Origin: Nageia nagi
Lineage: Eukaryota > Plantae > Pinophyta
DNA length: 64,000 bases
Reading direction: 5' to 3'
Assembly (NCBI GenBank): GCA_050084985.1
Contig: JBITNC010000002.1
Location: 15,376,001-15,440,000, forward strand
Position numbers and translations under genes: made by a program. The notes beneath the pieces were generated by a model, which searched no databases, was not told the DNA's origin, and saw only the letters and a program-made list of their open reading frames with translations. This document shows, in pieces, positions 1 through 40,580 of this stretch. The first letter of the stretch is position 1. Every line of letters begins with the position of its first letter.

Positions 1-7
1 AGGATTT

Positions 8-143
8 GAATCAAATGACACATCACTCCTTGGCCTCCTAGTAACTAGTGCAGGCAACTCCTCTGAATCAAATGACACATAAATCCTTAGCCTCCTAGTA
101 ACTAGTGCAAGAAAATCCTCTAAATCAAATGATACATCACTCC
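8..143. repeat. 57-bp tandem repeat (~2.4 copies), coding a 19-aa repeat on the - strand; second copy at ~6886-7021
   Basis: (g/a)aatcaaatga(c/t)acat recurs at 8, 65 and 122; the - strand reads EELPALVTRRPRSDVSFDS. Confidence 0.85.
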
Positions 144-506
144 TAAAAACTCTATTATGTTGAGGTTGTGGCATATAAATACTTGAATCTGATGATAAAT
201 AACTCCTCCTTTGCCTTGGTGGCATTGTATAAGCCAATTAGTCACTAACCTATTTTATAATTTAAAGAAAAAAAGAGATTAGTACATGAATAATAATAAT
301 CTATAAATATTTAAATCTTAGAATTAGAATTATTAAATAAATAAATTTTTTTCAACTAAAAATATAAAATGATCATATACATTCTATGCAATAGAAGACA
401 CATCATTAATCAAAGTTCTTTAAGGAGTTATCATTATAGGTAGAGATAATAGATAATGTGCAAGTGCTTTTAGAATAAAATATCCTTCTTTTATTGTAAT
501 CCAATT

Positions 507-736
507 CCTAACACTAACACTAACTATAACACTTACCCTAACCCTAACCCTAACCCTAACATAATTCCTAATTGTTAACCCAAACCCTAACTCCTAACCA
601 TTAATGTTAACCCTAACCAATAACCTAACCACTAACCCTAACTCTAACCTTAATGCTAACCCTAACCTAACCTTAATGCTAACCCTAATAGTAACCCTAA
701 CAAAAACCTTAACCTAGCCACTAAACCTAACCCTAA
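507..736. repeat. Degenerate interstitial telomere-like (CCCTAA)n tract, TTAGGG type
   Basis: Perfect (CCCTAA)4 at 536-559 within ~230 bp of CCCTAA/CACTAA/CCTAA/CTCTAA variants. Confidence 0.9.
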
Positions 737-1441
737 TGACTACAAGTGTAATGTCTTATATCATCCTTTTATGCTTTCTTTAAATGATGCCCTTGAGGGG
801 CTTTGCTAGTTTAACGATCATGATTGTACATACTAGTCCCATTGAATGCTTTTGGTCACCCAAGGATATTAATATACTTTCTTTTTATATGGTATAATCT
901 ATATGCATTGCATTTTATTATTCTCCTTTCATCATCATAAAAATAAACAAAATTGGAGGGTAAATTCCCTCACCATTAAAAGGCATAAACTATAGTTAAA
1001 AATGGTACTACAATCAAAAGGAAATTATCTCCCTTTCTCCCTTGTCTATCTTACTCTTTGCAGTCTATTGTTTCCATTTTAAGACCTTCATTTGTAACAT
1101 TATTTTGTTTAAGTTTTCATTTTCAAGGAGAAAACAAGTAATAAATTTATTTAAATATTGCATAACCAACATACAACATTATTGCATACTGTTAAAGTCT
1201 AAAAAGTAGTGCATATTACATTCAGTTGATACATGTTGATATAATTGCTAACATTTCTATAACCAAGGTAATGTAAAATGTCCATAAGGAAATCATCTCA
1301 TTTTATGCATTTTCCATCTCACTATCTTGTGTTCACATCATTTGCATTTTAAGACTTTCATTAATTTTTGTTTAAGTTTTCATTTTCAAGAATCTTAAGC
1401 TTATACAAGAAATAAGCAACAAATTATATTTGACTGCAATG

Positions 1442-5949: not shown

Positions 5950-7103
5950 ACATTAATGAAATTCATAATTTGGTGCCCATTCTTCACCTACACAACTATT
6001 TATGTATCCAACTATGCTTCCTTCTACTTTTGGTCGATCATCAATATATAAGCATTTTGATTGCTATGGAGGTGGAATATTGGAAGCATTTGTATATAAT
6101 CCATATGTGAAAATACTATATGTATATCCCTCTCATTGTCTCCAAATCGCTTCTATATAAATTGGCCCACAAAATGGCATCAATGGCTTTATCTCATAAC
6201 TTGGAGTAACCATTATAGTATTATGTATAAAAAAACCAAATCTAGAGCATATTTCAGATGGTTTGATCATGTATCGATGACCATAATAAGAAAAGATATC
6301 ATAAGCCTTTAGAAAAGGTATTTCAGATGGCCATGCACAATATGCCCCATAATCATATGTATATTGCTATTTAAGTTGTAGCTTTAGTGGCATGTGCATC
6401 AAACCCAAATCATGAACATCCTCCTCTGGTAGATCAAATGGATGCTCATATGCATCCTTTGCGAATTATTATGAAGCCACTTTTGAAATCTTGTTCTTAT
6501 AGGCATCTCTCTAACTTCATCTGTCAATGGACCTACACATTATTTTGGCTTCATCTTTTGGATCTACATATCAATTTTATTTAGTTTTATTTGATATCAC
6601 TCAATATATAATAATACAAAAATAAAATCAAATATTGATCAATTGATTAGCATCATCATATTCTGATGATGATGATGAATCATTGATCCTTTGCACTTTT
6701 TGTTCCCACAACATTAGCAATAAAATAAAGTTAAATATTGCAAATAATATCATGCATGAAAGTGATAATTTAGATGATCTTTCTTTTTTAACTACATCTT
6801 ATATAATAACAATTATCTTAACTAATTCTCATATGATTAAACATCACTCCTCCTCACAGGATGTATAGGAAATATCTCAGGATTTGAATCAAATGACACA
6901 TCACTCCTTGGCCTCCTAGTAACTAGTGCAGGCAACTCCTCTAAATCAAATGACACATAAATCCTTAGCCTCCTAGTAACTAGTGCAAGAAACTCCTCTA
7001 AATCAAATGATACATCACTCCTAAAAACTCTATTATGTTGAGGTTATGGCATCTAAATACTTGAATCTGATGATACATAACTCCTCCTTTGCCTTGGTGG
7101 CAT
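5950..7103 (-). pseudogene. Decayed second ORF upstream of and co-oriented with the transposase, product unknown
   Basis: ATG at 7103 (225 in copy 1) starts MPPRQRRSY...; further open-looking stretches such as DAYEHPFDLPEEDVHDLGLMHMPLKL...YDYGAYCAWPSEIPFLKAYDIFSYYGHRYMIKPSEICSRFGF with scattered stops. Confidence 0.4.
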
Positions 7104-8303
7104 TGTATAAGCCAATTAGTCACTAACCTATTTTATAATTTAAAGAAAAAAAGAGATTAGTACATGAATAATAATAATATATAAATATTTAAATCTTAGA
7201 ATTAGAATTATTAAATAAATAAATTTTTTTCAACTAAAAATATAAAATGATCATATACATTCTATGCAATAGAAGACACATCATTAATCAAAGTTCTTTA
7301 AGGAGTTATCATTATAGGTAGAGATAATAGATAATGTGCAAGTGCTTTTAGAATAAAATATCCTTCTTTTATTGTAATCCAATTCCTAACACTAACACTA
7401 ACTATAACACTTACCCTAACCCTAACCCTAACCCTAACATAATTCCTAATTGTTAACCCAAACCCTAACTCCTAACCATTAATGTTAACCCTAACCAATA
7501 ACCTAACCACTAACCCTAACTCTAACCTTAATGCTAACCCTAACCTAACCTTAATGCTAACCCTAATAGTAACCCTAACGCAAACCTTAACCTAGCCACT
7601 AAACCTAACCCTAATGACTACAAGTGTAATGTCTTATATCATCCTTTTATGCTTTCTTTAAATGATGCCCTTGAGGGGCTTTGCTAGTTTAACGATCATG
7701 ATTGTACATACTAGTCCCATTGAATGCTTTTGGTCACCCAAGGATATTAATATACTTTCTTTTTATATGGTATAATCTATATGCATTGCATTTTATTATT
7801 CTCCTTTCATCATCATAAAAATAAAAAAAATTGGAGGGTAAATTCCATCACCATTAAAAGGCATAAACTATAGTTAAAAATGGTACTACAATCAAAAGGA
7901 AATTATCTCCCTTTCTCCCTTGTCTATCTTGCTCTTTGCATTCTATTGTTTCCATTTTAAGACCTTCATTTGTAACATTATTTTGTTTAAGTTTTCATTT
8001 TCAAGGAGAAAACAAGTAATAAATTTATTTAAATATTGCATAACCCACATACAACATTATTGCATACTGTTAAAGTCTAAAAAGTAGTGCATATTACATT
8101 CAGTTGATACATGTTGATATAATTGCTAACATTTCTATAACCAAGGTAATGTAAAATGTCCATAAGGAAATCATCTCATTTTATGCATTGTCCATCTCAC
8201 TATCTTGTGTTCACATCATTTCCATTTTAAGACTTTCATTAATTTTTGTTTAAGTTTTCATTTTCAAGAATCTTAAGCTTATACAAGAAATAAGCAACAA
8301 ATT
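6879..8303. repeat. Direct repeat copy 2 of 1-1425
   Basis: Begins aggatttgaatcaaatgacacatc exactly as position 1; near-identical for 1425 bp. Confidence 0.95.
7385..7615. repeat. Degenerate interstitial telomere-like (CCCTAA)n tract, copy 2
   Basis: Perfect (CCCTAA)4 at 7414-7437; duplicate of 507-736. Confidence 0.9.
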
Positions 8304-8968
8304 TATTGAAGTATTGCATATAAGTAACTTTAATAGCAAATTGCTAAAGCTAAAGAAGTAGTAATGTAGTAGACACATGTTGATAAACTTGCTAACATTT
8401 CTACACCTAAGAATATCTAAAAAACTTCATCTATGACAACAAAATTTATGCTTTACAGATATGCTGAGAAATTTAGGACAAACTTGAGCTTTACACTAAA
8501 ACTCCTTTCACCCTTTTGAGGGAATAATTCAACCATTATCTAGCAATAGAATCAATTCATGAGTACAGTCTAATATATAAGACACAAATCATGCATTATC
8601 TAGCAATAAAGTCAATTTTTACTAGACTCATTATATGCAAAAAATAAATATAGTTAACCACCAAATATAGTTTACCAATTATTAATAGTAAATAATTTAC
8701 ACAATATATACCAAATGATAGAAACCTTCATGTTAGGTATTTAGGTATGAATATATACCAAATTCATATCAAATAAAGAATTCAACTAGAACCTATAAAG
8801 AGCAAATTAAATAGGTTTTCCTTAAATTATTATTTTGTTATTAAGCATCATTCTAGTTCAAAAATTTGTGAACATGAATACTTCAACATGTAATTTTTAT
8901 TTAGATCCAATAACATACTTACAAACATAAGTATATCTTAATAATAAATAGGTATTAAAACACTAATA
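7620..8968 (+). repeat. Inverted repeat A, left copy (pairs with 16285-17625)
   Basis: Reverse complement matches along its length, e.g. cttatatcatccttttatgctttctttaaatgatgccc vs gggcatcatttaaagaaagcataaaagggtgatataag. Confidence 0.92.
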
Positions 8969-9178
8969 GTGCAATAATAGTGGTCTTGGTAGTAGTGTTA
9001 TCATGAACTTATGAAGTTTCATGTCTTGGTTCAAATCGAGAAGGCATGCAAATGGTACATGAGATCAATAGAGGACCCATGATTGATGTGGATATTTTTA
9101 ATCCACTAGAAGAAGCTTCCTTCATGCAAGATAAAGTCCTCAAGCCTTAACCAAAGCATCCATTCATAGATTTATTAG
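8969..9178 (+). pseudogene. BSP-like exon copy (5'-truncated, left arm of palindrome 1)
   Basis: Reverse complement of 9394-9606. Confidence 0.7.
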
Positions 9179-9393
9179 ATGATCACCTTATCCATATTCT
9201 TGTTATCAAAATAATGTGATATATAATTTTTTGAGTCAACTAATTTCAAAGGATGATGATATTACTAATATATCAAGTTGATTGTAGCTATATCAAAATA
9301 TATATTAGTAATATCACCATCCTCTAAAAAATGTTGACTAAAAAATTGTATATCACATTATTTTGATAACATGATTATGGATAAGGTGATCAC

Positions 9394-9619
9394 CTGATAA
9401 ATCTATGAATGGATGCTTTGGATAAGGCTTGAGGACTTTAGCTAGCATGAAGGTAGCTTCTTTTGGTGGATAAAAAGTAACCAAATCAATCTTGGGTTCT
9501 TCTCTATTAATCTCATGCACCATTCACATGCCTTCTTGATTTGAACCAAGGCATGAAACTTCCCAAGTCCATGATAACACTACTACCAAGACCACTATTA
9601 TTGCACATCTTCCTTCCAT
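9394..9619 (-). pseudogene. Captured first coding exon of a bark storage protein A / nucleoside phosphorylase-like (PNP_UDP_1 family) gene; best-preserved copy
   Basis: MEGRCAIIVVLVVVLSWTWEVSCLGSNQEGM*MVHEINREEPKIDLVTFYPPKEATFMLAKVLKPYPKHPFIDLS-G|gtgatc: signal peptide plus the BSP-type motif EINR.GP.IGLVTVYPPEE.AF....KP.PKHPFVDLSG, ending at a splice donor; one TGA stop. Confidence 0.8.
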
Positions 9620-12600
9620 CCTTAAAAGTGAAGGAAAAGAACTTGTATTAACTTGTTGTATTCTTTGTATTATATATAAACATGATGAAGAAGGTAGTGG
9701 AGACATATTTAGGTCTAAAAATAAGACTATCTAAATAAGTATTGACAAAAGAATGTTTTACAAGGCATTAGTCATCCAATTATATACATCAAAATATGAT
9801 GATTACGATAAATAATAGGGTTATATATAAATAAAGATTTTAAAACCTTATCTTTCAAATAGGCATGTTGTATTTGAATGTTCAAATATTTGAGACACTA
9901 GTCATGTGATTAATCTCATCAAGAAGCAAAATGACCCCATAATCATGGAACTACAACAACTATAAAATGTGTTTTTAGATCTCCAACCTAGAAATTCTAA
10001 TACCTTGTCTCCTATTTCTAGCCAAAAATGTAGAAATAAGAATTGGAATAACAAGAAACAATATCATGGTAAATCAATCAAGCCACTGATCCAACTTAAC
10101 TATAACTAACAATGCAGTTGTTCTCAATAACAAGGTATGAGACCAATAGTAGGTCATAGTTTTTTGGTAGAATCCTATCACTAATACATTCATTCAACTA
10201 AAACAAACATGAAAATTCAATATTCCCCTAGTACATTTTTAAAGAAGTTATGTAAAAATAATAACATTTTGCAAGCAATAACCAAGCCAGTTCACACAAC
10301 ACAAAAATTGACTACATTCAAATCCATCAAAACTAATAAGATATGATACATGAAATCACTGATATCATTATGTATTCATCATAGAGTGTATTCTACAATC
10401 CTCAATTGGCATTCCATAGTTAAGGGAAATATTAGCTGGTACTTTCTTTTATAAAATTCATTACAAAAACTAACTTCATGCAAGCAATACCAACTCTAGT
10501 TCACAACTTAAATATTTGATAGCATGAAAGTCTGCAAAAACAAACTCCCATGGACTCTTGAACAATGCCTTTGCAGTCCTTGGATTTTCAATACTATTTT
10601 CACACTTACAACCAACATTTCAATCTTTTTATTAGTTCACTTTTGTTAATTTTTAGTTCTTAAAAACTAACATGCTGGCTAACATAAGTACTCCTAAAGA
10701 CATTGTTATTTTCTAAATGCTATAAATGTTTCAAAAACTATAAGATAGATTGTTATTAACATTTATATATCAATGTTCATTCAAATCATTCTATTACTTT
10801 CTCATGAAAGTATAAAACTCAATGTGCATCCAACTCACAATTCTATCTTCTCAAGAAAAATCAAATTTTATTCAACTTAGCATTGCACCTTTAAGAAAAA
10901 TCTAAAAGAAAAAAAATTATCTTTTGGTTTTATTGAAATTTAATTCAATTCAACATTTTCAGTAAATTCCAAATCAAAGTTCATTCAACTCATCATTGTA
11001 TCTCCTAAGGAAAAATGTAAAATCAAAATTCATTCAACTAAACATTGCACCTTTCAGAATAATCTAAAATTCAAAAGTTTCATCCATCTTCCAGTTTATG
11101 GAGTTTATTACATTTTTTAGATGTCACTAAACTCACTAAGAAGCAGATAACTACAATCTCCAAGTAAATATAGCAAATGAATTATTAAAACACAAATACC
11201 AAAAGGAATGATATGAATGAGCCTATTTTATGGATTTAATTCCATCTGTGAAGGAAAAAGAAGAGGTGTCATGGAGCATGTGTTTGCTTTGGAATTTATT
11301 GAAAATGATGAATTGAATTAAATTTTAATAAAATAAAAAGATAAATTATTTGATTTTTAGATTTTTCTTAAAGGTGCAATGCTATTTTGAATGAAATTTG
11401 ATTTTTCCTGAGAAGATAGAATTGTGAGTTGGATGCACATTGATTTTTAGACTTTCATGAGAAAGTAATAGGATGATTTGAATGAAATTTGATATATAAA
11501 TGTTAATACTAGTCTATCTTATAGTCTTTGCAACATTTATAGCATTTAGAAAATAACAATGTCTTTAGTAGTACTTATTTTACCCAGCATGTTAGTTTCT
11601 AAGAACTAAAAATTAACAAAAGTGAACTAATAGAAAGATTGAAATGTTGGTTGTAAGTGTGAAAATAGTATTGAAAATCCAAGGACTACAAAGGCATTGT
11701 TCAAGATTCCATGGGAGTTTGTTTTTGCGGACTTTCATGCTATCAAATATTTAAGTTGTGAACTAGAGTTGGTATTGCTTGCATGAAGTTAGTTTTTGTA
11801 ATGAATTTTATAAAAGAAAGTACCAGCTCATATTTCCCTTAACTATGGAATGCCAATTAAGGATTGTAGAATACACTCTATGATGACTACATAATGATAT
11901 CAGTGATTTCATGTATCATATCTTATTAGTTTTGATGGATTTGCATGTAGTCAATTTTTGTGTTGTGTGAACTGGCTTGGTTATTGCTTGCAAAATGTTA
12001 TTATTTTTACATAACTTCTTTAAAACTATACTAGGGGAATACTTTCCCATTAATGGTGAATTCCAATTATGGATTGTATAATATTGATGGTGAATACATA
12101 TTGGTGACTAAATATATAATCTTACTAAATGATTTTTGTATTTTCATGTTTGTTTTAGTTGAATGAATGTATTAGTTGGAGGGGTATGGATTACAAGGAG
12201 TAAAGGAACATTCTGGTTGCAAATTAAAATATTTTCTACAAGAATTATGATGATAAAGAAATAATGTTATGATAGGAACTTAAGACCATTACGAAATGGA
12301 TACATTAAGGAGATGAGAGCTGAATCGAGCTTCTAGAGAAGAGCAGTTCTTACCTTGGCTACAATATCCAAAATTGATTTGTATTTACCCTTTTAGGAAT
12401 TCTAATGGGGTTTGGGGAGCATAAAATTTTCATATCTCTCTTTGTTACTCCTTAGGTATAAATAACCAAAGGAGAAGTACCAAACTGGTGAATTATACTA
12501 TTAGTGATTTTTCTATCCATTGCACCATGTAGACGTATGATGAAACTAAGATAATGGTTTTCATTATTTATGGTAGCACTCCATTCATTAGTGAGAGCCT

Positions 12601-13249
12601 CCTCTTGGTAATTATTATGTGCCCATCTATAGATCAAATTGGTCATTATTTAGATTATAGATAGCCCAAACTATCTTGTATGGTGTTGGTGATAGGATCC
12701 TACCAAAAAACTATGACCTGCAATTGGACTCATACCTTGTTGTAGAGAACAACTACATTGTTAGTTATAGTTAAGTTGGATCAGTGGCCTAATTGATTTA
12801 CCATGATATTGTTTCTTATTATTTTAGTTCTTGTTTCTCCATTTTTGGCTAGAAATAAGGGATGAGGGAGTAGAGTTTGCATGTTACAGATCTGAAAACA
12901 CATTTTTTAGTTGTTGTAGTTCCATGATGATGGGTTCATTTTTCTTCTTGATGAGATTAATCACATGATTAGTGCCTCAAATATTTGAACATTCAAATAC
13001 CACATGCCTATTTGAAAGATAAGGTTGTAAAATCTTTATTTATAGATATCCCTATTCTTTATCATAATCTTGAGATTTTGATGTATATAATTGGATGACT
13101 AATGCCTCGAAAAATATTCTTTTGTCAAGACTTGTTTATATAGTCTTATTTTTAGACTTGATATCTCTCCACTACCTACTTCTTTGTGTTCATATACAAT
13201 ATAGACAATAGAGCAAGTTCATCCAACTTCTTTTCTTTCACTTTTAAGG

Positions 13250-13476
13250 GTGGAAGGAATATGTGCAATAAATAATGGTCTTGTTAGTAGTGTTATCATG
13301 GACATGTGAGGATTCATACCTTGGTTCAAATTGAGAAGGCATGCAAATGGTGCATAAGATCAATAGATAAGGAACTGGGATTGTTGTGGTTACTATATAT
13401 ACACTAGAAGAAGCTATCTTCATGCAAGCTAAAGTCCTAAAGCCTTATCAAAAGTATCCATTCATAGATTTATCAG
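13250..13476 (+). pseudogene. BSP-like exon copy (left arm of palindrome 2)
   Basis: Same exon, start mutated to GTG, with indels; ends ttatcag|gtgatt. Confidence 0.72.
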
Positions 13477-13692
13477 GTGATTACCTTATCCACAATCATG
13501 TTATAAAAATAATGTGATATACAATTTTTTGATTCAACTGCTTTCATAGGATGATGATATTACTAATATGTCTTTTGAGATAGCTACAATTGACTTGATA
13601 TATTAGTAATATAATCATCCTACGAAATCAGTTGACTCAAAAAATTGTATATCACATTATTATGATAACATGACTATGGATAAGGTGATCAC

Positions 13693-13918
13693 CTCGTAAA
13701 TCTATGAATGGATGCTATGGATAAGGCTTGAGGACTTTAGATTGCATAAAGGCAACTTCTTTTTATGGATAAATAACAACCACATCAATCCTAGATTCTT
13801 CTTTATTGATCTCATGCACCATCTGCATGCCTTCTTGATTTGAACCAAGGCATGAAATTTCACAAGTCCATGATAACACTACTACCAAGACCACTATTAC
13901 TGCACATCTTCCTTCCAT
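13693..13918 (-). pseudogene. BSP-like exon copy (right arm of palindrome 2)
   Basis: MEGRCAVIVVLVVVLSWTCEISCLGSNQEGMQMVHEINKEESRIDVVVIYP*KEVAFMQSKVLKPYP*HPFIDL. Confidence 0.75.
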
Positions 13919-15110
13919 CCTTAAAAGTAAAAGAAAAGAAGTTGGATGAACTTTTAGTATTCTATATATTGTATATAAACATAAAGAAGTAGGTAGTGAA
14001 GAGATATCATGTCTAAAAATAAGACTATCTAAATAAGGCTTGACAAAAGAATGTTTTAGGAGGCATTAGTCATCCAATTATATACATCAAAATCTGATGA
14101 TAATGATAAAGAATAGGGTTATCTATAAATAAATATTTAACACCCTTATCTTTCAAATAGTTATTAGAAACTAACATGTTGGCTAACATAAGTACTACTA
14201 AAGATATTGTTATTGTCTAAATGCTATAAATGTTGCATAAAATATATGATAGACTAGTATTAAAATTTATATATTGAATTTCATTCAAATCATCCTATTA
14301 CTTTCTCATAAAATTCTAAAAATCAATGTTCATCCAACTCACAATTGTATATTCTCAAAAAAAATCAAATTTCATTCAACTTAGCATTGCACCTTTAAGA
14401 AAAATCTAAAAATCAAACAATTTATCTTTTGGTTTTATCGAAAGTTAATTCAATTCATCATTTTTAGTAAATTCCAAATCAACACATGCTCCATGAGACC
14501 TATTTTTTTTCCTTCATAGATGGAATTAAATCTAGACAATAGGCTCATTCATATCATTCCATGTACCATTAATGCTATTTGTAATAGAACCACTAATCAA
14601 TTTAGGCAACCATAATGAGAGTCCTCTATCATAGATAAAATTTCTACAATTAATCTTCCAAATAGATTTAAAACCATCACTATGAATTTTATTTACCAAA
14701 TATTATTGATAAGAAATTTGCTTAGGATGCACACAACTATTCTTCATTAACAGAGAGGGCTTGCCATGAACAGGTTCAAGTTTAGAGGTTTTCTCACCCA
14801 AACCTAGATTCAAACCTTCAAAAACCCTATTCTCCTCTTTGCACTCCATTATGGATTTTAAAAACTATTTCATTTATCTTAATTTGATTAAATTATATTC
14901 ATGTTGAGCTTCTAGGATCAACTTTTTAAATTCATTGAGTTTAATGTCTTGAAAGCCCTATGGGTTTATGGAACTTGTGTCTACCTTTATCCCTTAATAT
15001 TGGATAATTTTAAAATTATTTTGTACCCCTTGAATATTATGGATCATTATTATATATATTATGTTATATTTCAGCATTGGATTCATGACATTTTTGTTTT
15101 TGGTATGTAA

Positions 15111-16097
15111 AACGAACAAATTTAAAGCCACAAAAGTGGATGAAAGGCAAAGGATGTACAATAATTCAATTTGGTTGTTGCTAGGATTATGCAATGGTAA
15201 GTTAAACAAAATTTGTGGCATAAGTTTCCCCACTTGCTACCTTTATATTTTCATTAGATTGCTCAAGTCCAAAATTTATTTTGTAGAAAAAAAATGGGAA
15301 TCCCCTTGGAATTTGTGTGGGATGAAGAAGTGGATCCAATTCATCTTTTATTTAAAACTACTATCCATTGATTGCTAAAATGGCATGTTTTGCCCCCATC
15401 AAATGTACCTAATAGTTGTATTGTTAATATTTATGAGAAAGGTGATTGCATACTACCTCACATTGACCACCATGATTTTGTGAGGCCTTTCTATACAATA
15501 TAATTTCTCAATGAATGCAACATTATATTTGGAACATACTTGAAGATATTAGGACCAGGTCATTTTGCAAGTGCCATCGCCATACCATTGCTAGTAGAGT
15601 AAGGACATGTGTTGTTTGTTTTCAATATCCATAGTTACTAATTACCTTTGTTGATGTTAATTTTGTTATTGGGACTTGAAAAGTTAATGATTTGATAAGT
15701 GGATGTTTAATACAGGTTAGTTCTTATGATAAATGGAAATGGAGCAGATGTTGCAAAGCTTTCAATCCCATTTATCCCATGTAAAAGGTTTTCAATGATA
15801 TAATTGCTTTCACCTTTTCCTGAAGCTTTCATTTTCTTAATAATTATTGACCTTATATGTTCTTTATTTTTCTTATACAGAATTTATATAACATTTATAA
15901 ATATGGACCATTCAAAGATGCCATACAACTTTGTTCATGAGCCTAATTCATAAGGTATTGAACCTCTTTCTCACACAAAACTTGTTGCCCACAACCAATC
16001 TAAGCAATTAAATGGACAACATGCAATTGGGGAGCTAATATTGGTAGAAGAAAGTACTATGCCTATTGCTCCAACATTTTCTATAAATGCTACTTGA
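15111..16097 (+). pseudogene. ALKBH9B: ALKBH9-like RNA m6A demethylase fragment, 4 exons with introns retained (15111-15196, 15287-15598, 15716-15787, 15881-16097)
   Basis: PQKWMKGKGCTIIQFGCC*DYA|gt; NGNP...DEEVDPI...WHVLPPSNVPNSCIVNIYEKGDCILPHIDHHDFVRPF...GPG; LVLMINGNGADVAK...KR|; ITF..MD.SK...EP...GIEPL, matching plant ALKBH9 motifs; in-frame stops, 5' exons missing. Confidence 0.9.
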
Positions 16098-16105
16098 AAT
16101 GCAAG

Positions 16106-16245
16106 AATCATTTGTTATGGATTTTCTAATCCTTTATACAATCATTTGTTATGGATTTTTGAATCCTTTATTCAATCATTTGTACAACTACTGCTCATGG
16201 TATTCATCATTCAATCATTTGTTATGGATTTTCTAATCCTTTATA
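16106..16245. repeat. 34-bp tandem repeat (~3.5 copies)
   Basis: aatcatttgttatggattttctaatcctttat at 16106, 16140, 16174 (partial) and 16214. Confidence 0.85.
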
Positions 16246-16284
16246 GGAGAATATAAATCAATTATTGATAGAATTTGACCATAT

Positions 16285-17625
16285 ATTAGTGTTTTAATAC
16301 CTATTTATCATTAAGATATACTTATGTTTGTAAGCATGTTATTATCTCTAAATAAAAATTACATGTTGAGGTATTCATGTTAACAAAATTTTGAACTAGA
16401 ATGATGCTTAATAAGAAAAGAATAATTTAAGGAAAACCTATTTAATCTGCTCTTTGTAGGTTCTAATTGAATTCTTTATTTAAGATGAATTTGGTATATA
16501 TTCATACCTGAATACCTAATGTGAAGGTTTCTATCATTGGGTATATATTGTGTAAATTATTTACTATTAATAATCAGTAGACTATATTTGATGGTTAACT
16601 ATATTTGTTATTTGCATATAATGAGTCTAGTAAAAATTAACTCTATTGCTAGATAATGTGTGATTTGTGTCTTATATATTGGACTATACTCATGAATTGA
16701 TTCTATTGCTAGATAATGGTTGAATTGTTCCCTCAAAAGGGTGAAAGGAGTTTTAGTGTAAAGCTCAAGTTGGTCCTGAATTTCTCAACATATTTGTAAA
16801 GCATGAGGAGTTTTATTTTCATAGATGAAGTTTGTTAGGTATTATTGGGTGTATAAATGTTACCAAGTTTATCAGCATGTGTCTACTACATTACTATTTC
16901 TTCAGCTTTAGTGGTTTACTATTAAAGTTTCTTGTATGCAATACTTCAATAAATTTGTTGATTATTTCTTGTATAAGCTTAAGATTCTTGAAAATGAAAA
17001 CTTAAATAAAAATGAATGAAATTCTTAAAATGGAAATGATGTGATTACAAGATAGTTAGATGGACAATGCATAAAGTGAGATGATTTCCATATGGAAATT
17101 TTACATTACCCGAGTTGTAGAAATGTTAGCAATTATATCAGCATGTAACTACTGAATGCAATATGCACTACTTTTTAGGATTTAATAGTATGCAATAATG
17201 TTTCATGTGGGTTATGCAATATTTCAATAAATTTGTTGCTTGCTTTCTCCTTGAAAATGAGAACTTAAACATAACAATGTTACAAATGAAGGTATTAAAA
17301 TGGAAATAATGGAATGCAGGAGTGATATGAAAAAGGGAGACAATTTCCTTTTAGTTGTAGTACCATTTTTAACTATAGTTTGTGCCTTTTAATGGTGAGG
17401 GAATTTACCCTCCAATTTTGTTTATTTTTATGATGATGAAAGGAGAACAATAAAATGCAATGCATCTAGATTCTAAGGTAAAGAAAAAAAGTATATTAAT
17501 ATCCTTAGGTGGCCAAAAGTAGTCAATGGGACTAGTATGTTCAATCATGATCATTAAACCAACAAATTCCCTAGAGGGCATCATTTAAAGAAAGCATAAA
17601 AGGGTGATATAAGCAAATACACATG
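16285..17625 (-). repeat. Inverted repeat A, right copy
   Basis: attagtgttttaatacctatttat... is the reverse complement of ...aaataggtattaaaacactaat (~8946-8968); co-linear but diverged. Confidence 0.92.
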
Positions 17626-19894
17626 TACAAAAGGTCCACACCCTAAAGAGAGGGAGGAACAAAATCATAATCAATTAGAGAAACTTTTAAAGCACAAGTA
17701 TAATGATCATAATTTAAAATACAAAGATTTATCGAGAAAAGAAATTCAAGTTATATTAACTAAGCATTATAAAACATGATAAAATCAAATAAAAAACATA
17801 GTAAGCACTTTATCTCTTATCGCCCTATCTCACTATGCTCCAAATAACATGTTTGAATAGATATATAGCTTCTTTCACACATTAATCAATGGTTAGAAAT
17901 TTGAACTTTAATGTTAGGATGTTAAGTATTCATGTCATTCAAAGGGGACCATTTGTGACCATTGTTCCATATTTAATACACTCACAATGGTATACAATTT
18001 TTCACCATGCTTTTTGCTCCATTATTTATTTCATGCATCTTTCACAATTACTACTACATCTTGTTAATGCTCCAATTTATATTTGAAGTTGATCCAATGG
18101 CTAGGAGGGGTTGAATATCAATAATAAGTAATTGAGATTTTATCAAATTTGATAAGCCTTAGGCTGATCAATATGAAAAAAAACATGTGCTTACAACTCT
18201 TTGGTTCAAGCTTGGACATATTTTAATTGATAGTATGTCTCCAAGCATTGCGTGAAAACCAAAACATAAATTTTTTGGGATGGGTAGGGTAGGGTATGAT
18301 GATATGTATCTTCAAGATGAGTATGACTTGGGCCCAATTTTGGACATGAAGGGTATGACAATATATATAAAATTAAAACTCAAAATTATCAATTCAATTA
18401 ACGAACATGTCATTAAATCATTATGCTTGCATGAAGTTAGTTTTTGTAATGAATTTTATAAAAGAAAGTACCAGTTGATATTTACCTTAACTATGGAATT
18501 CCAATTGAGGATTATATAATCCACTCTATGATGAATACATATTGATATCAATGATTTCATGTATCATCTCTTATTAGTTTTTATGGATTTGAATGTAGTC
18601 AATTTTTGTGTTGTGTGAACTAGCTTGGTTATTGCTTGCAAAATGTTATTATTTTTACATCACTTCTTTAATAAAGTACTATGGGAATACTTTCCCATTA
18701 ATGGTGAATTCTAATTATGGATTGTATAATCTTGATGGTGAATACATATTTGTGACTAAATATATAATCTTATTGAATGATTTTTGTATTTTCATGTTTT
18801 TTTAGTTGAATGATTGTATTAGTTGGAGGGGTATGAATTACAGGGAGTAAAGAAACATTCTGGTTGCAAATTAAAATATTTTCTACAATAGTTACAATGA
18901 TAAAGAAATAATATTGTAATAGGAACTTAAGACCATTACAAAATGGATGCATTAAGGAGATGGGAGCTCAATTGAGCTTTTGGAGAAGAGCAGGTCTTCA
19001 CTTGGCCACAATATCCAAAATTGATTTGTATTTATCCTTTTAGGCATTTCAATGGGGTTTGGGGGCATAAAATTTTCATATCTCTCTTTTTAACTCTTTA
19101 GGTGTAAATAACCAAAGGAGAAGTAGCAAACTAGTGAATTATAGTATTAGTGATTTTTCTATCCATTGCACCATGTTGACGTATGTTGAAACTAAGACAA
19201 TGGTTTTCATGATTTATGGTAGCATTGCATTGATTATGAGAGCCTCCTCTTGGGAATTATGATGTGCCCATATATAGATCAACTTGGTCATTATTTAGAT
19301 TATAGATAGGCTAAACTATCTAATGTGGGGTTGGTGAAAGGATCCTACCAAAAAACTATAACATGTTATTGGCCTCATATCTTGTTGTTGAGAATAACTA
19401 TGTTGTTAGTTATAGTTAAGTTAAATCAGTGGCCTGATTGATTTACCATGATATTATTTCTTATTATTCTAGTTATTGTTTCTACATTTTTGGATAGAAC
19501 TAGGGGATGAGGAAGTAGAGTTTTTAGATTGAAGATCCAAAAATACATTTTATAGTTGTTGCAATTCCATGATGATGGGGTTATTTTTCTTCTTGATGAG
19601 ATTAATCACATGACTAGTGCCTCAAATATTTGAACATTCAAATACAATGTGCATGTTTGAAAGATAAGGCTATAAAATCTTTATTTATAGATAACCCTAT
19701 TCTTTATTTTAATCTTGAGATTTTGATGTATATAATTGAATGACTAATGCCTTGTAAAACATTCTTTTTTCAAGCCTTGTTTAGATAGGATTATTTTTAG
19801 ACCTGAGATCTCTCCACTACCTGCTTCTTTGTGTTTATAAACAATATAAATAATAGAGCAAGTTCATCCAGCTTCTTTTCTTTCACTTTTAAGG

Positions 19895-20127
19895 ATGGAA
19901 GGTATATGTGCAATAATAATGATCTTGGTAGTAGTAATATCATGGACTTATGAGGTTTCATGCCTTGGTTCAAATCGATAAGGCATGTGAATGGTGCATG
20001 AGATCAATAGAGAATGACCCAATATTGACGTGGTTACTATTTCTCCACTAGAAGAAGATGACATCAAGCAAGCTAAATTCTAAATTCCTAAAACCTTATC
20101 CAAAGCATCCATTCATAGATTTATCAG
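19895..20127 (+). pseudogene. BSP-like exon copy (left arm of palindrome 3)
   Basis: ATG 19895 MEGICAIIMILVVVISWTYEVSCLGSNR*GM*MVHEINRE*P...; donor ttatcag|gtgatc. Confidence 0.75.
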
Positions 20128-20342
20128 GTGATCACCTTATCCATAATCATGTTATCAAAATAATGTGATATACAATTGTTTAGTCATCTTCTTTCAAAGG
20201 ATTATGATATTACTAATATATATTTTGAGATAGATGTAATTGACTTGATATATTAGTAATAACATCATCCTCTAAAAGCATTTGACTAAAAAAATTGTAT
20301 ATCACATTATTTTGATAACATGATTATGGATAAGGTGATCAC

Positions 20343-20569
20343 TTGATAAATCTATGAATGGATGCTTTGGATAAGGCTTGAGAACTTTAACTTGCATGAA
20401 GGCAACTTCTTCCTAGTGGATAAATAGTAAACATATCAATCCTAGGTCCTTCTATACTAATCTCATGAACAATTCATATGCCTTCTCGATTTGAACCAAG
20501 GCATGAAACCTCACAAGTCCATGATAACGCTACTACCAAGACCACTATTATTGCACATCTTCCTTCCAT
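20343..20569 (-). pseudogene. BSP-like exon copy (right arm of palindrome 3)
   Basis: Reverse complement of 19895-20127, with indels. Confidence 0.72.
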
Positions 20570-22554
20570 CCTTAAAAGTGAAGGAAAAGAAGTTGGATTA
20601 ACTTATTGTATTCTTTGTATTGTATATAAACACAATGAAGTAGGTAGTGGATACATATCAGGTCTAAAAATAAGACTATCTAAACAAGGCTTGAAAAAAG
20701 AATATTTTACGAGGCATTAGTCATCCAATTATATACATCAAAATCTGATGATTACGATAAATAATAGGGTTATCTATAAATAAATATTTTATAGCCTTAT
20801 CTTTCAAATAGGCATGTTGTATTTGAATGTTCAAATATTTGAGGCATTATTCATGTGATTAATCTCATCAATGCAACAACTATAAAATATGTTTTCAGAT
20901 CTCCAACCTGGAAACTCTATTTTCTCATCTCCTATTTCTAACCAAAAATGTAGAAATAAGAACTAGAATAATAAGCAATAATATCATGATAAATAAATCA
21001 GGCCACTCGTCACACTTAACTATTACTAACAACACAGTTGGTCTAAACAACAAGGTATGAGGCCAATAGCAAATCATAGTTTTTTGATAGGATCCTGTCA
21101 CCAACCCCACATAAGATAGTTTGGGCTATCTATAATCTAAATAATGAATAGTTTGATCTATATATGGGCACATAAAAATTCCTAGGAGGAGGCTCTCACT
21201 AATCAATGGAGTGCCACCATAAATCATGAAAACCATTGTCTAAATTTCAACATACATTTACATGGTGCAATGGATAAAAAATTTACTATTACTATAGTTC
21301 ACCAGTTTATTGTTTCTCCTTTGGTTCTTTATCCCTAAAGAATAATAAAGAAAGATATGAAAATTTTATGCTCCCCAAACCCCACCAAAATATCTAAAAG
21401 GATAAATAAAAATCACTTTTGGATATTATGGCCAAGGAAAGAGCTGCTCTTCTCCAGAAGCTCAATTAAGCTCTCATCTCCTTAATGTATCCATTTCATA
21501 ATGGTCTCAAGTTCCCATCAGAACATTATTTATTGATGATCATAAGGCTTACATAAAATATTTTAATTTGCAACCATAATGTTTCTTTACTTCTTGTAAT
21601 TCGTACTCCAACTAATACAACCATTTGACTAAAATAAACATGAAAATACAAAAATCATTCAGTAAGATTATATATTTAGTCACCAATATGTACCAAGATT
21701 ATAAAATTCATAATTAGAATTCACCATTAATGGGAAAATATTCCCCCATTAATTTTTTAAAGAAGTGATGTAAAAATAATAACATTTTGCAAGCAATAAC
21801 AAAGCTAGTTTACACAACACAAAAATAGACGACATGCAAATATGTAAAAACTAATAAGAGATGATACATGAAATCATTGATATCAATATGCATTCATCAT
21901 AGAGTGAATTCTACAATCCTCAATTAGCATTCCATAGTTAAGGTAAATATTATCTCATACTTTCTTTTATAAAATTCATTACAAAAACTAACTTTATGCA
22001 AGCAATACCAACTCTAGTTCACAAATTAAAATTTTGATAGCATGAAAGTCCAAAAAAACTAACTCCCATGGACACTTGAACAATTCCTTTGTAGTCCTTG
22101 GATTTTCAATACTATTTTCATACTTTCAACCAACATTTCAATCATTCTAGTTCATTCCCTTTTGTTAATTGTTAGTTCTTAGACACTAACATGTTAGGTA
22201 ACATAAGTCCTACTAAAGACATTGTTATTTTCTAAATGCCATAAATGTTGCAAAAACTATAAAATATACCAATATTAACATTTATATATCAAATTTCATT
22301 CAAATCATCCTATTACTTTCTCATAAAAGTCTAAAAATCAATGTTCATCCAACTCAAAATTGTATCTTCTCAGGAAAAATCAATTTTCATTCAACTTAGC
22401 ATTGCAACTTTAAGAAAAATCTAAAAATCAAATAATTTATCTTTTGGTTTTATCAAAAGTTAATTCAATTAATCATTTTTAGTAAATTCCAAATCAAACA
22501 CATGCTCCATGACACCTCTTCATTTTCCTTCAGAGATGGAATTAAATCCAGACA

Positions 22555-22670
22555 CTCATCTTCACTAACAAGTCACTAGTCTTTAGTAACAAGTTGCTCA
22601 TCTTCAGTAACAAGTCACTAGTCTTTAGTAACAAGTTGCTCATCTTCAACAACAAGATGTTTATCTTTAG
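22555..22670. repeat. 42-bp tandem repeat built from 21-bp subunits
   Basis: ctcatcttcactaacaagtcactagtctttagtaacaagttg repeated ~2.5 times, abutting the end of palindrome 3. Confidence 0.85.
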
Positions 22671-29355: not shown

Positions 29356-32300
29356 ACCATTTTCATTAGTCTATGGAGATGAGGTTGTAATACCATTAGA
29401 GTTGGAGTTGCCATCCTTATGAATTTCATTACAAGAAGAAATATCATATGAAGAATCAAGGAAAGCTAGATTGCAACAATTGGAATCACTTGATGAGAAA
29501 AGAATCAAGGTTGCAATTGAACATCAAAAAGCTTATCATGCAAATTTGAAAAGGGCATTTGGAAATAAGATTAAACCCAATGAATTCAAGGTGGGAGACT
29601 TGGAACTAAAAAAAAAAACATTAACAAGATAATTGCAAATGAAGTAAAAGGGAAATTTGAGCCAAATTGGATAGGCCCATTTGTTGTAATTGAAGCAACA
29701 AGAGGAGGAGCTTACAAGTTATCATCCATGGATGGAAAAGAACAACCCAAAACCTTCAATTCCATGCACCTTAAATGCTTCTTTGTGTAATGCAATGGCT
29801 ATGTGCCTTACAAAATAATGAATATTTCACATAAGGTATATGAATTTTATTTTTCATTTACATTTTTATAGTTTCTTTCATTATTTTCATGCAACTAACA
29901 ATGTGCATTACTATCTGTACATCGCTAACTATGTAAAAAAAAAACACAACACTATAATGTCTATGGACCATGGATAAATAAACGTTAGGTCACTGATAGC
30001 CATCAATATGAGTAGTGAGAGTTCACTCACTTGAAAGATAAATCAAGAATGCAATCATAAGCAATATGTGGACATTGATTCATCCTATCTCAGGGTCATA
30101 GACATAAAATGTATGACCACCAATAGCCATCGATACAACTAGTAAGAGTTCACTCACTTAAAAGTTTAATTGGTGATGCATTCATAAGAAAGATGTGGAT
30201 ATTGATTCATCCTTAATGGACTATACAACTTGCTATGTATCCACATGGTTTTTTCTTTGAACCATACAAAGCATAATTTCTTACGGTCATAGACATAAAA
30301 TATATGACCATTGATAGCCATCGATACAGCTAGTGAGAGTTCTCTCACTTAAAAAAGAAAAATTGATAATGTAGCCATAAGTAAGATTGCTAACATTGAT
30401 TCATCATTAATGAAAGACCCAACTCACTATGTATCTAAAATATTTTCGAGTAAATGCAAGAAGATGAGTCCCACTTTGGAGGTAGTCTTATGAACTGCTA
30501 GGTTTTTGTATTTGTTTAATAACTTTTTATTTCTTAGAATTATGAAAAAAATATATGTGCACCATTTGTATACAATTCTTCACAAGTTAAATAAAAAATA
30601 AATTAAAAATGATAAGTTTTATTCAAATTATGCTTATCGAACATGAGCATTTTTTGAAACAATAATCATGGCCAATAAAAAATAAAATATTCATGGTAAA
30701 AATACAAAAAATATTCTCCATAATATTTAGTGTCTTAGGTATCTTTAACCAAAAGGATTTAAAAAAATATTTTAATTTAGGTCAAGTTATGCTTGATAGA
30801 CACGAGGGGTATGGTCTTGAAATTGTATTTTTTAAACAATGGTTTTTGTATTTATTTAATAACTTTTTATTTTTTCATAATTGTGAAAAAAATAATATAT
30901 GTGCAATTCTACATACAATTTTTCATAAGATAAAAAAAAATAAAAATGATAAGTTTAGGTCAAATTATGCTTGTTGAACACGAACAATTTTTGAAATGAT
31001 AATCACAGTTAATAAAAAATTATTAAAAAATAAAATATTACAAAATAATAAACTCCACAATTTTTAGGGTATTAGGTATCTTTACTCAAAAGGATTTTAA
31101 AATATATTTTAATTTATGTTTAATTATGCTTACCGAACACAATGGGGGTATGGTCTTGAAACTGTATTTTTTAAATAGTGGCTTTTAAATATGTCTACAA
31201 AAAAATAATTTCTATAATTTGGGTATTAGAATAAATTACATATTTGAAAACTAGACTTTGAGAACTATATTTTTATCCAAGTGACCTTTTTCAAGAAACA
31301 AAATCTAAGTGCTTCAAATTTTAAGATCAAGTACAAGCAAACCTAAAAATCAGAAAAAACACTTCCACTTTTTGGATAAAAGTGGGACTCATCTTCTTGT
31401 ACTTACCCTTTTATGCAGGGTATATTTAACACTCTTTGTAGAAATGATGTAGAATCCACACCATCAATGGTGTACACTATTGTTTACTTGCAACTAGTAG
31501 CATGCATATGAATGAACCTAGATCTCAAATCAAGTGATCTCTTCTATATCAAGGCATGGATGTAAGTACATCACATTCTTGAGCACCAAAAATGATGAAA
31601 TGATAAGATTTATGGTTAGAAAATGTAAGGGGATAAAGAACCTCTTCTATTTCAAAGATTGGATGTGGTACCATAAGAACACCTTATAGTAGAGTTCCTT
31701 ACATGATAGAAATATTGCAAGGGGTAAAAGGATGCAGTTCTTTAGGCATTACCTTGGCTACACCACTTAAGGAGCTTTCTTGGGGAAACCAGGTCAAAAG
31801 AGGGCAACAAAGGACCCTCATCATGACATGGTAGTGTTGGATAAAGAGTTCAAAGTTCTTAAAAATTTCTTCTAAACTTTTTCTTTGGATATGAAATTTC
31901 ATTTCTTCAATCACACCTCCAAAGAGGGGCAAAATGTAGATGCCTAAAAATAAATTATCACTTATTAAATAATCCATTTTATAACATTAAGGGATATTTA
32001 TTGTAAAAAAGGGTTAAAATATACCCAAGGTAATGCAATCAATGTAATGAACCATTATATGATGTAAAGATTATCAAATATCAAAAAGGACATCACAAAT
32101 AATGTAATGAGCAATGATCCCAAGAATCAAAGATAATCAAAACATTACTATAAAAAATAATCAAAGGCAACATAATTGACATCGGTAGATATCTAGAGAA
32201 AAAAACCAAGACATACAATATCATTCTATCTAACCAACAATGATGTTTTGTAACACTATCTCTACATAGATTCGTTAAACCCCTCATTTCACTTATTCAT

Positions 32301-40473: not shown

Positions 40474-40580
40474 TATGGATATGCTAAGTCCAACCGATGG
40501 GTGACCATGTTGGCATGGATGAGGTTGGATGTGACTACCTGATGATTTTGATGAAAGATGATCCCTAAACCCTATTTCAA

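What the first reader, a model, noticed from the sequence alone, without database searches (positions are those of the whole stretch)
8969..22555. Giant palindromes carrying a host bark-storage-protein exon facing a 28-nt loop: candidate hairpin-RNA / proto-miRNA locus
Seen: three copies of one palindrome (arms up to ~2.3 kb; loops at 9273-9300, 13571-13598 and 20221-20248). Each arm holds a 226-nt exon (ATG, signal peptide, ...HEINRE.P.ID.VT.YP.EE.AF...KPYPKHPFIDLSG, GT donor) that stops ~95 bp from the loop, giving six copies in convergent pairs. Known: the motif fits plant bark storage protein A / nucleoside phosphorylase-like storage proteins, and inverted duplication of target-gene fragments is the established route to new plant hairpin siRNA/miRNA loci. 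Inference: a transcript entering either arm would read through the loop and fold into kb-long dsRNA able to silence the parental gene in trans. This may be an undescribed foldback, gene-capturing repeat family.
Basis: partly seen in the sequence, partly recalled or inferred. Interest (0 to 1): 0.85.

Follow-up and report, generated by a model that had tools for sequence, protein, structure and literature searches.

The report
Decayed palindromes of a storage-protein exon
Three old, mutated DNA palindromes in a plant genome each carry two dead copies of the first exon of a bark-storage-protein-like gene; they look like scars of repeated fold-back duplication after DNA breaks, and nothing yet shows that they work as a gene-silencing hairpin.

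Summary
There are three palindromes with 26-nt loops at 9274-9299, 13572-13597 and 20222-20247. They hold six convergent copies of one ~226-nt exon, each ending 94-95 nt from its loop.

The exon belongs to the plant PNP_UDP_1 / bark-storage-protein-A-like family. This rests on a profile search, and 119 full-length family proteins hit only these six places in the window.

All six copies are disabled. No later exon lies anywhere in the 64 kb.

Any two arms differ by 9-16% (K about 0.11-0.14 within a palindrome). Decay is GC-to-AT biased, and the mismatches show no bias that would preserve RNA pairing.

All three loops are one junction, flanked by ATATAT. P1 is a whole-unit inversion of P2: its loop is flipped, the two join tail to tail near 11.1 kb, and their flanks are inverted too (7619-8968 / 16284-17627).

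Best reading: a relic of one fold-back inverted duplication in intron 1, copied again in at least two further local rearrangements.

One public run of the same sample holds a spliced, open-frame mRNA of a related gene. It is about 85% alike, with perfect 37-63-nt runs against four copies. It holds no contig of the palindrome itself. Hairpin silencing is therefore possible but unsupported. A mobile foldback family is not supported.

The same stretch carries two other first-reader notes in this scan.

The parts
7619..8968 (+). Flank F, the left inverted flank of the P1-P2 block. It joins P1L at 8968/8969.
   Evidence: 90.5% identical to the reverse complement of 16284-17627.
8969..9273 (+). P1 left arm, arm positions 1-309 only. 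Its exon copy is 8969-9178: 5' truncated, no ATG, donor AT, in-frame stops.
9274..9299 (.). Loop 1, 26 nt, flanked by ATATAT on both sides. It is the reverse complement of loops 2 and 3.
9300..10978 (-). P1 right arm: arm positions 1-854 and 1490-2251, with a ~640-bp internal deletion at 10181/10219. Its exon copy is 9619-9394, with one in-frame TGA at 9526-9524.
10979..11204 (.). Tail-to-tail junction between P1R and P2L, the centre of the larger F...F' palindrome. It includes a ~100-bp local repeat of tail sequence (10971-11075).
   Evidence: (I1).
11205..13571 (+). P2 left arm, a full arm of ~2.37 kb. Its exon copy is 13250-13476: ATG changed to GTG, a frameshift and stops.
   Evidence: A conversion patch is 97.7% identical to P1R across arm positions 1490-1926.
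13572..13597 (.). Loop 2, 26 nt.
13598..14560 (-). P2 right arm: arm positions 1-564 joined to 1926-2367, a 1.36-kb internal deletion at 14158-14160. Its exon copy is 13918-13693, with two in-frame stops.
   Evidence: Its outer end is the same as that of P2L.
14561..16283 (.). Unique stretch X between P2R and F'. It has no counterpart on the P1 side and contains a 34-bp tandem repeat at 16106-16245.
16284..17627 (-). Flank F', the inverted copy of F.
   Evidence: (I3, I4, I16).
18424..20221 (+). P3 left arm, arm positions 1-1757, truncated at 18424. Its exon copy is 19895-20127, with stops and a 7-bp insertion.
20222..20247 (.). Loop 3, 26 nt, in the same orientation as loop 2.
20248..22554 (-). 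P3 right arm, a full arm of ~2.3 kb. Its exon copy is 20569-20343, with a stop and a 1-nt insertion at 20413. The 5'UTR-like stretch runs to at least 20689.
   Evidence: A spliced mRNA contig of a related gene lies on 20344-20689 at about 85% identity.

Best explanation
This is a dead structural relic, not a working gene.

What was copied: the 5' part of a bark-storage-protein-like (PNP_UDP_1) gene. The piece held about 2 kb of upstream sequence, the 5'UTR, exon 1 and the first 95 nt of intron 1.

Step 1 (inferred). A break in intron 1 left an end that folded back on a short self-complementary ATATAT. A 26-nt loop stayed unpaired, and fill-in synthesis plus replication made a palindrome.

Step 2 (shown by the anatomy). 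The whole palindrome, loop included, was then copied at least twice more nearby.
- One copy is inverted. This gives P1 versus P2, with a flipped loop, a tail-to-tail junction at 10979-11204 and inverted flanks F/F'.
- One copy is direct, giving P3.

Timing (inferred). All this happened in one short episode. The pattern fits successive rounds of fold-back priming or small-scale breakage-fusion-bridge-type rearrangement.

Aftermath (shown). The six arms have since decayed neutrally. The changes are GC-to-AT substitutions, stops, frameshifts, kb-scale deletions and one gene-conversion patch.

Present activity (not shown). At most the locus is a source and target of repeat-associated small RNAs, like other plant inverted repeats.
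For: One junction copied three times: the three loops are the same 26-nt sequence flanked by ATATAT. The P1 loop is the reverse complement of the other two.

P1-P2 symmetry: P1R and P2L face each other tail to tail (I1). The flanks 7619-8968 and 16284-17627 are inverted copies at 90.5%.

One burst of copying: all six arms are about equally distant from one another, 84-91%. Within-palindrome K is 0.11-0.14.

A single capture: many differences from the expressed relative are shared by all six copies.

Neutral decay:
- 107 of 181 substitutions leave G or C, although G and C make up only a third of the sites. This also explains the uneven conservation along the arm.
- G:U-compatible mismatches are equal for the two possible transcripts: 8/10, 18/17 and 55/62.
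- Every exon copy is broken.

No other part of the gene: 119 full-length family proteins hit only the six exon-1 copies.

Mechanism known elsewhere: fold-back priming at 5-11-bp inverted repeats with spacers up to 35 bp, and second rounds after breakage of the dicentric chromosome, are documented experimentally in yeast (PMC10622511, read; also PMC3834830).
Against: - The progenitor's intron 1 could not be fetched. It is therefore unproven that the loop and ATATAT pre-existed as unique sequence.
- P2L and P2R end at exactly the same base with a 19-bp perfect terminal inverted repeat, and the arm tails hold 42-45-bp sub-repeats. Both would also suit a transposon.
- Four copies keep perfect 37-63-nt matches to an expressed relative around the start codon, longer than expected at 75-83% identity. 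This leaves room for function or for gene conversion.
- The order and number of the copying events cannot be resolved from a star-like set of distances.
Confidence: 0.65

Rival explanations
1. The palindromes are a working hairpin-RNA locus. Transcription starts from the promoter copies kept in the arms and runs through the loop. The RNA folds into long imperfect double strands, Dicer-like enzymes cut these into small RNAs, and the small RNAs repress the intact bark-storage-protein-like gene in trans.
For: - Each arm keeps the 5'UTR (at least 119 nt upstream of the ATG lies under the mRNA contig) and 1.6-2 kb further upstream.
- The P2 core folds into a 560-bp stem with an energy of -699 kcal/mol.
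- An intact, spliced, expressed relative exists in the same sample.
- Four copies share perfect runs of 63, 47, 41 and 37 nt with that mRNA around the start codon.
- Inverted duplication of target genes is the accepted origin of young plant MIRNA and hairpin loci (PMC3237417, PMC2582634).
Against: - No contig at least 95% alike lies on P3 in the only run available, while the relative's mRNA is assembled there at depth 19. This is weak evidence, because contigs show presence, not absence, and hairpin RNAs are quickly cut.
- No RNA holder was listed.
- The arms have drifted 11-14% apart with no excess of pairing-preserving changes on either strand.
- Two of the six copies have no run of 21 nt against the mRNA.
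- Rfam finds no known MIRNA.
Confidence: 0.13
2. The unit is a mobile foldback-type or gene-capturing transposon (Pack-MULE or CACTA-like) that picked up exon 1 and inserted three times. Alternatively, the 10-kb block 7619-17627 is one such element with 1.35-kb terminal inverted repeats.
For: - P2L and P2R share the same outer end, with a 19-bp perfect terminal inverted repeat.
- The arm tails hold 42-45-bp sub-repeats.
- Other contigs of run X1 match the tails at 87-90%, with depths up to 162, so the tails belong to a dispersed repeat.
- A weak DUF4216 match (E 2.5e-05, 25.2 bits, below Pfam's 30.6-bit cut-off), which I read as a CACTA-type transposon remnant, lies 7 kb away.
Against: - There is no target-site duplication at 11205/14560 or at 7619/17627.
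- The outer ends of P1R, P3R and P3L differ from those of P2.
- All copies sit within 13.6 kb and carry the identical internal loop junction.
- Non-repeat flank was co-duplicated with them.
- Nothing else in the 64-kb window resembles the arms.
- A contig of X1 crosses the F' end at 17627, so that point is not a terminus in related copies.
Confidence: 0.12
3. The palindromes are an assembly artefact made from chimeric or fold-back reads.
For: Palindromic joins are a known artefact of some long-read libraries (my own knowledge).
Against: - Artefactual arms would be nearly identical. Here they are 84-91% alike, with many indels and different internal deletions.
- The same loop occurs three times with its own substitutions.
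Confidence: 0.02

Closest known systems
Fold-back inversions / palindromic amplification by fold-back priming and breakage-fusion-bridge cycles (yeast and tumour models: PMC10622511, PMC3834830, PMC7999016)
   Same: - The palindrome centre is a short unpaired spacer (26 nt) bounded by a few bases of self-complementary sequence.
- A second junction of opposite polarity (tail to tail) doubles the first palindrome and flips its loop.
- The flanks are duplicated in inverted order.
   Different: - The scale is a few kb rather than tens of kb to Mb.
- The structure is fixed in a plant germline and is millions of years old.
- The third copy is direct, which simple breakage-fusion-bridge cycles do not predict.
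- The steps are inferred from the end product only.
Plant hairpin / proto-MIRNA loci born by inverted duplication of a target gene (inverted duplication model: PMC3237417, PMC2582634). From my own knowledge: the soybean CHS inverted-repeat I locus, rice LGC-1 and the Arabidopsis PAI1-PAI4 inverted repeat.
   Same: - It is an inverted duplication of the 5' part of a protein-coding gene, with the promoter region retained.
- The stem is foldable.
- Some segments are still perfectly complementary to an expressed relative.
   Different: - No transcript or small RNA is shown.
- The arms are far longer and more decayed than in known young MIRNAs.
- There are three palindromes rather than one.
- There is no evidence that the target is repressed.
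Pack-MULE and foldback transposons that carry gene fragments
   Same: - Long inverted arms contain a host exon.
- There are sub-repeats near the outer ends.
- One copy (P2) has matching termini.
   Different: - There are no target-site duplications and no termini shared by all copies.
- The gene fragment lies in both arms right up to a 26-nt loop, rather than between the terminal repeats.
- The copies are clustered and share their flanks.
Bark storage protein / NP-like gene family (PNP_UDP_1, PF01048; PMC3751785)
   Same: The exon-1 sequence has the family's signal peptide and its conserved first-exon motif that ends in PFIDLSG. The exon border is at the same place as in an expressed family member.
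   Different: Only exon 1 is present, in six broken copies. The phosphorylase domain itself is absent from the window.

Membership tests
PNP_UDP_1 / bark-storage-protein-like gene | First-exon sequence homologous to family members (signal peptide plus the conserved motif that ends in PFIDLSG) | tested here: met
   A profile of the six copies finds plant proteins with E 1e-11 to 6e-4. Three of them carry PF01048 just downstream of the matched part. 119 proteins named bark storage protein A(-like) or nucleoside phosphorylase hit the six copies, with E down to 1e-12.
PNP_UDP_1 / bark-storage-protein-like gene | Presence of the phosphorylase domain (later exons) and an open reading frame | tested here: not met
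   Pfam finds nothing on the exon pieces. No residue beyond exon 1 of any family protein matches anywhere in the 64 kb. All six copies carry stops or frameshifts. The copies are gene fragments, not genes.
Hairpin-RNA / proto-MIRNA locus from inverted duplication | Inverted duplication of a segment of a protein-coding gene that can fold into a stem-loop | tested here: met
Hairpin-RNA / proto-MIRNA locus from inverted duplication | Transcription through the inverted repeat | tested here: inconclusive
   No RNA holder was listed. The one run laid on the stretch has no contig at least 95% alike on P3. Contigs cannot prove absence.
Hairpin-RNA / proto-MIRNA locus from inverted duplication | Small RNAs of 21-24 nt that map to the arms | not testable with these tools
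   No small-RNA library was available. Logan contigs cannot hold 21-24-nt reads.
Hairpin-RNA / proto-MIRNA locus from inverted duplication | Complementarity to an expressed target | tested here: met
   Perfect runs of 63, 47, 41 and 37 nt link four copies to a spliced mRNA contig of the same sample. The mRNA stretch was rebuilt from the difference table, so it depends on that table being complete.
Pack-MULE / foldback transposon | Target-site duplication flanking the element | tested here: not met
   No matching flanks of 2-10 bp at 11205/14560 or at 7619/17627.
Pack-MULE / foldback transposon | The same termini in all copies | tested here: not met
   P2L and P2R share an end. P3R stops 27 bp short of it, P1R about 75 bp short, P3L at arm position 1757 and P1L at 309.
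Pack-MULE / foldback transposon | Dispersed copies in the genome | not testable with these tools
Fold-back inversion / palindromic amplification | Short asymmetric spacer at the centre, bounded by a micro inverted repeat | tested here: met
   A 26-nt loop lies between ATATAT and ATATAT in all three palindromes.
Fold-back inversion / palindromic amplification | Alternating junction polarity with co-inverted flanks | tested here: met
   There are head junctions at the loops, a tail junction at 10979-11204, a flipped loop in P1 and the inverted flanks F/F'. P3 is a direct copy and does not fit a pure alternation.
Fold-back inversion / palindromic amplification | Progenitor sequence holds the spacer and the micro-repeat as unique sequence | not testable with these tools
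   The progenitor's intron 1 could not be obtained.

The most novel reading that the evidence does not exclude
The three palindromes are a natural RNAi locus for a storage-protein gene. In this reading their retained promoters drive hairpin RNAs in some tissue or season. The 37-63-nt stretches that stay identical to the start-codon and signal-peptide region of the intact bark-storage-protein-like mRNA yield small RNAs that tune that gene. This would be comparable to the soybean CHS I locus or rice LGC-1, but ancient and triplicated.
Probability: 0.1. Interest if true: 0.6.

Novelty: new member of a known kind. Interest (0 to 1): 0.3.

Why it matters
As it stands, this is a clear, datable plant-germline example of kb-scale fold-back inverted duplication followed by further rounds of copying. 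That process is mostly studied in yeast and tumours. The locus shows what such a structure looks like after a long period of neutral decay, which I put at millions of years.

If small RNAs from the arms were found to act on the intact gene, it would add a storage-protein gene to the short list of natural hairpin-silenced plant genes. It would also show a proto-MIRNA precursor frozen at the long-hairpin stage.

Without expression data it is an ordinary pseudogene relic with an unusually legible history.

Tried and rejected
- Pfam on the exon pieces found nothing; the pieces are too short and lie N-terminal of the domain.
- The ESM Atlas on the 43-aa piece gave only chance-level methyltransferase clusters, scores below 0.8.
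- Rfam over the whole window gave no family.
- The look-up of sequencing runs listed no RNA holder, only X1 with a share of 0.00.
- An exact degenerate DNA pattern from the exon's 3' end found nothing in metagenome contigs.
With the 56-aa piece it returned one locus, L001. That locus has 43% GC, no family match beyond a shared motif and no DNA similarity, so I rejected it as chance.
- Look-ups of the scan's earlier findings by sequence and by relatives were blank.
- Selection for RNA pairing was tested by counting G:U-compatible mismatches per strand. The counts were symmetric, so the idea was rejected.
- The uneven conservation along the arm first looked like constraint near the loop. Base composition and the GC-to-AT mutation bias explain it.
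- 'Flip-flop' loop inversion, as in hairpin-telomere replication, was considered. The flipped loop of P1 goes with inversion of the whole unit and its flanks, so no separate flip is needed.
- The top profile hit, P0001, is a low-complexity repeat protein and was discarded.

Full report
OBSERVATION

The window is AT-rich plant DNA (about 30% GC) with transposon remnants.

An inverted-repeat scan and a self-BLAST show a dense set of inverted and direct matches between 7.6 and 22.6 kb. I read every copy from its loop outwards and mapped it on the longest arm. This gives the following arms:

| Arm | Window coordinates | Arm positions held |
|---|---|---|
| P2L | 13571 to 11205 | full arm, about 2.3-2.37 kb |
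| P3R | 20248 to 22554 | full arm, about 2.3-2.37 kb |
| P3L | ends at 18424 | 1-1757 |
| P1R | 9300-10181, 10219-10978 | 1-854 and 1490-2251 |
| P2R | 13598-14160, 14158-14560 | 1-564 and 1926-2367 |
| P1L | 9273 to 8969 | 1-309 |

The three centres are 26-nt loops at 9274-9299, 13572-13597 and 20222-20247. Each is bounded by ATATAT on both sides.

Six copies of one exon lie 94-95 nt from the arm ends, all pointing at their loop. The correction is that the facing stems are 305, 564 (plus a tail) and 1757 bp, not 2.3 kb.

WHAT THE EXON IS

None of the six copies is intact.
- P1R has one in-frame TGA.
- P2R has two stops.
- P3R has a stop and a 1-nt insertion.
- P2L has GTG in place of ATG, plus a frameshift and stops.
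- P3L has stops and a 7-bp insertion.
- P1L lacks the first 15 nt and has AT in place of the GT donor.

I aligned the stop-free pieces (A2) and searched the resulting profile against 1.84 billion representative proteins. Apart from one low-complexity false hit, it found 15 plant sequences with E 1e-11 to 6e-4.
- Three of them carry PF01048 (PNP_UDP_1) just after the matched part.
- They are named nucleoside phosphorylase domain proteins of Acer and Dovyalis.

A search with one of these proteins returned 119 further, mostly full-length proteins. Many are named bark storage protein A or A-like, and all carry PF01048. Run by tblastn against the window, all of them hit the six exon copies and nothing else.

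Bark storage proteins are members of this NP-like family (PMC3751785). So the family assignment holds, but the window contains only first-exon fragments.

AN EXPRESSED RELATIVE, AND NO SIGN OF THE PALINDROME AS RNA

The look-up of sequencing runs listed no RNA holder. It listed only one run, X1, from the same sample, kept as contigs.

I laid X1 on 17000-22600 at a likeness of 80 or more. No contig was at least 95% alike on palindrome 3.

One 1327-nt contig (depth 19.4) lies on 20344-20689, that is, on the P3R exon copy plus about 119 nt upstream of its ATG. It differs by 49 letters and 3 gaps. It stops fitting within 1 nt of the exon/intron border. Read in the gene's direction, its loose end continues the frame as G-RRYRIGTIY, the start of exon 2 in this family (compare P0018). 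Three things follow:
- The donor site is real.
- X1 contains cDNA.
- An intact relative is expressed in the same sample.

From the difference table I rebuilt, inside a script, the interior 260 nt of that contig, covering 20383-20645 only. Differences closer than 40 nt to the piece's ends are not listed by the tool. This is exon 1 and 5'UTR only.

The rebuilt stretch has an open frame with the same signal peptide as the copies. It is 75-83% identical to the single copies and 88% identical to their six-copy consensus. Many of its differences are shared by all six copies. So the six copies descend from one captured copy, and the expressed gene stands outside them, either as the progenitor's descendant or as a paralogue.

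Around the start codon and signal peptide the mRNA is identical to the consensus for 79 nt. Perfect runs with single copies are 63 nt (P1R), 47 nt (P3R), 41 nt (P2R) and 37 nt (P1L). P2L and P3L have no run of 21 nt.

HISTORY READ FROM THE ANATOMY

1. One junction, copied. The three loops are the same sequence with a few substitutions. The head junction therefore arose once and was copied.

2. P1 is P2 turned round as a whole. The evidence is:
   - its loop is the reverse complement;
   - P1R and P2L face each other tail to tail across 10979-11204 (I1);
   - the flanks 7619-8968 and 16284-17627 are inverted copies at 90.5%.
   The two halves differ by deletions: 640 bp in P1R, 1.36 kb in P2R, and everything between arm position 310 and flank F on the P1L side.

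3. P3 has the orientation of P2.

4. One burst of copying. All arm pairs are about equally distant, 84-91%. Within-palindrome K is 0.11, 0.14 and 0.13. The copying events were therefore close in time and old. By commonly used plant substitution rates (my own knowledge, rough) this means several million years.

5. One later conversion. A patch of 97.7% identity between P1R and P2L across arm positions 1490-1926, set among segments of 87-91%, is best read as a later gene-conversion tract.

A 26-nt unpaired spacer between a few self-complementary bases is the signature of fold-back priming at a broken end. Second rounds after breakage of the resulting dicentric chromosome give higher-order inverted structures (PMC10622511; PMC3834830).

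I therefore infer one fold-back event in intron 1, followed by at least two more local rearrangements. The steps are inferred from the product. The progenitor intron was not available.

IS ANYTHING CONSERVED?

Conservation along the arm is uneven. It is 92-95% for the last 40 nt of the exon plus the intron start, and 60-78% in mid-exon.

The substitution spectrum explains this:
- 107 of 181 changes leave G or C.
- AT-rich stretches change little.
- Transitions and transversions are equal (90 and 91).

Mismatches that would still pair as G:U are equally frequent for the plus and the minus transcript. There is thus no sign of selection for an RNA stem.

The P2 core folds, as any inverted repeat must, at -699 kcal/mol. 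Rfam finds nothing in the window.

TRANSPOSON TEST

For a transposon:
- P2L and P2R end at the same base with a 19-bp perfect terminal inverted repeat.
- The tails hold 42-45-bp sub-repeats.
- Other X1 contigs match the tails and the end of F' at 81-90%, so those parts belong to dispersed repeats.

Against a transposon:
- There are no target-site duplications at either candidate pair of ends.
- The outer ends differ among arms.
- The copies share one internal junction and duplicated flanks, and all sit within 13.6 kb.

The metagenome scans gave nothing real.

VERDICT

- The structure is real, old and not an assembly artefact.
- Its origin as an inverted duplication of a bark-storage-protein-like gene's 5' part is supported.
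- Its present function as a hairpin-RNA locus is physically possible: promoter-side sequence is retained, the stems fold, and perfect 37-63-nt matches link four copies to an expressed relative. No expression evidence supports it, and the decay looks neutral.
- The 'new gene-capturing foldback family' reading is not supported.

It is a new example of a known kind of structure.

HOUSEKEEPING

- The degenerate (CCCTAA)n array at 7385-7614 resembles vertebrate-type telomere repeat. I did not choose it as a query for any search. The automatic 1,500-letter margin did include part of it.
- The same stretch carries two other first-reader notes in this scan (s1-853711, s1-853728). I tested both, and they are listed under earlier findings.

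Noticed in passing
window 7385-7614 (and, by the 98.9% duplication, about 507-736): A degenerate array of CCCTAA units (six-base, not the seven-base CCCTAAA type) ends 4 nt before flank F, exactly where the F/F' inverted homology stops. With CCCTAA to the left of the block, its orientation is the one expected of a healed left chromosome end. This could be a scar of telomere addition during the rearrangements, or just an interstitial repeat. F' has no such array next to it.
   Followed up: partly
window 1-1430 and 6879-8307: A direct repeat, 98.9% identical, brackets 5.4 kb that holds a weak DUF4216 match (below Pfam's cut-off) at 1445-1768 on the minus strand, possibly a CACTA-type remnant. 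The second copy overlaps flank F, and F' spans its end at 8307. So this is a recent segmental duplication rather than a pair of LTRs.
   Followed up: partly
window 20490-20580 (P3R) and the matching parts of the other copies: A 79-nt stretch around the start codon and signal peptide is identical between the expressed relative's mRNA and the six-copy consensus. The remaining 181 compared nt differ by about 17%, far more uneven than chance. Purifying selection on the gene, gene conversion or a small-RNA/target relation could each explain it.
   Followed up: partly
window 8969-14160 (five-arm alignment of arm positions 1-564): The substitution spectrum is unusual. Transitions equal transversions (90 to 91), and G>T plus C>A make up 48 of 181 changes.
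   Followed up: no
window 22555-22667: A 21/42-bp tandem repeat, up to 95% matches, starts exactly where the P3R arm homology ends.
   Followed up: no
window 22372-22498, 22094-22257, 18454-18680, 17445-17653: Contigs of run X1 match the arm tails and the end of F' at 81-90%. One of them has depth 162. So these parts belong to an abundant, probably transcribed, dispersed repeat.
   Followed up: no
window 55206-58092, minus strand: A decayed copia-type retrotransposon: RVT_2 (E 9e-40), GAG-pre-integrase and a weak integrase core, in separate broken ORFs.
   Followed up: partly
window 16106-16245: A 34-bp tandem repeat of four copies lies in the unique stretch X between P2R and F'.
   Followed up: no
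window 40566-41091 / 43218-43737 and 30501-30847 / 30841-31186: Further direct repeats (82% and 80% identical) that are unrelated to the palindromes.
   Followed up: no
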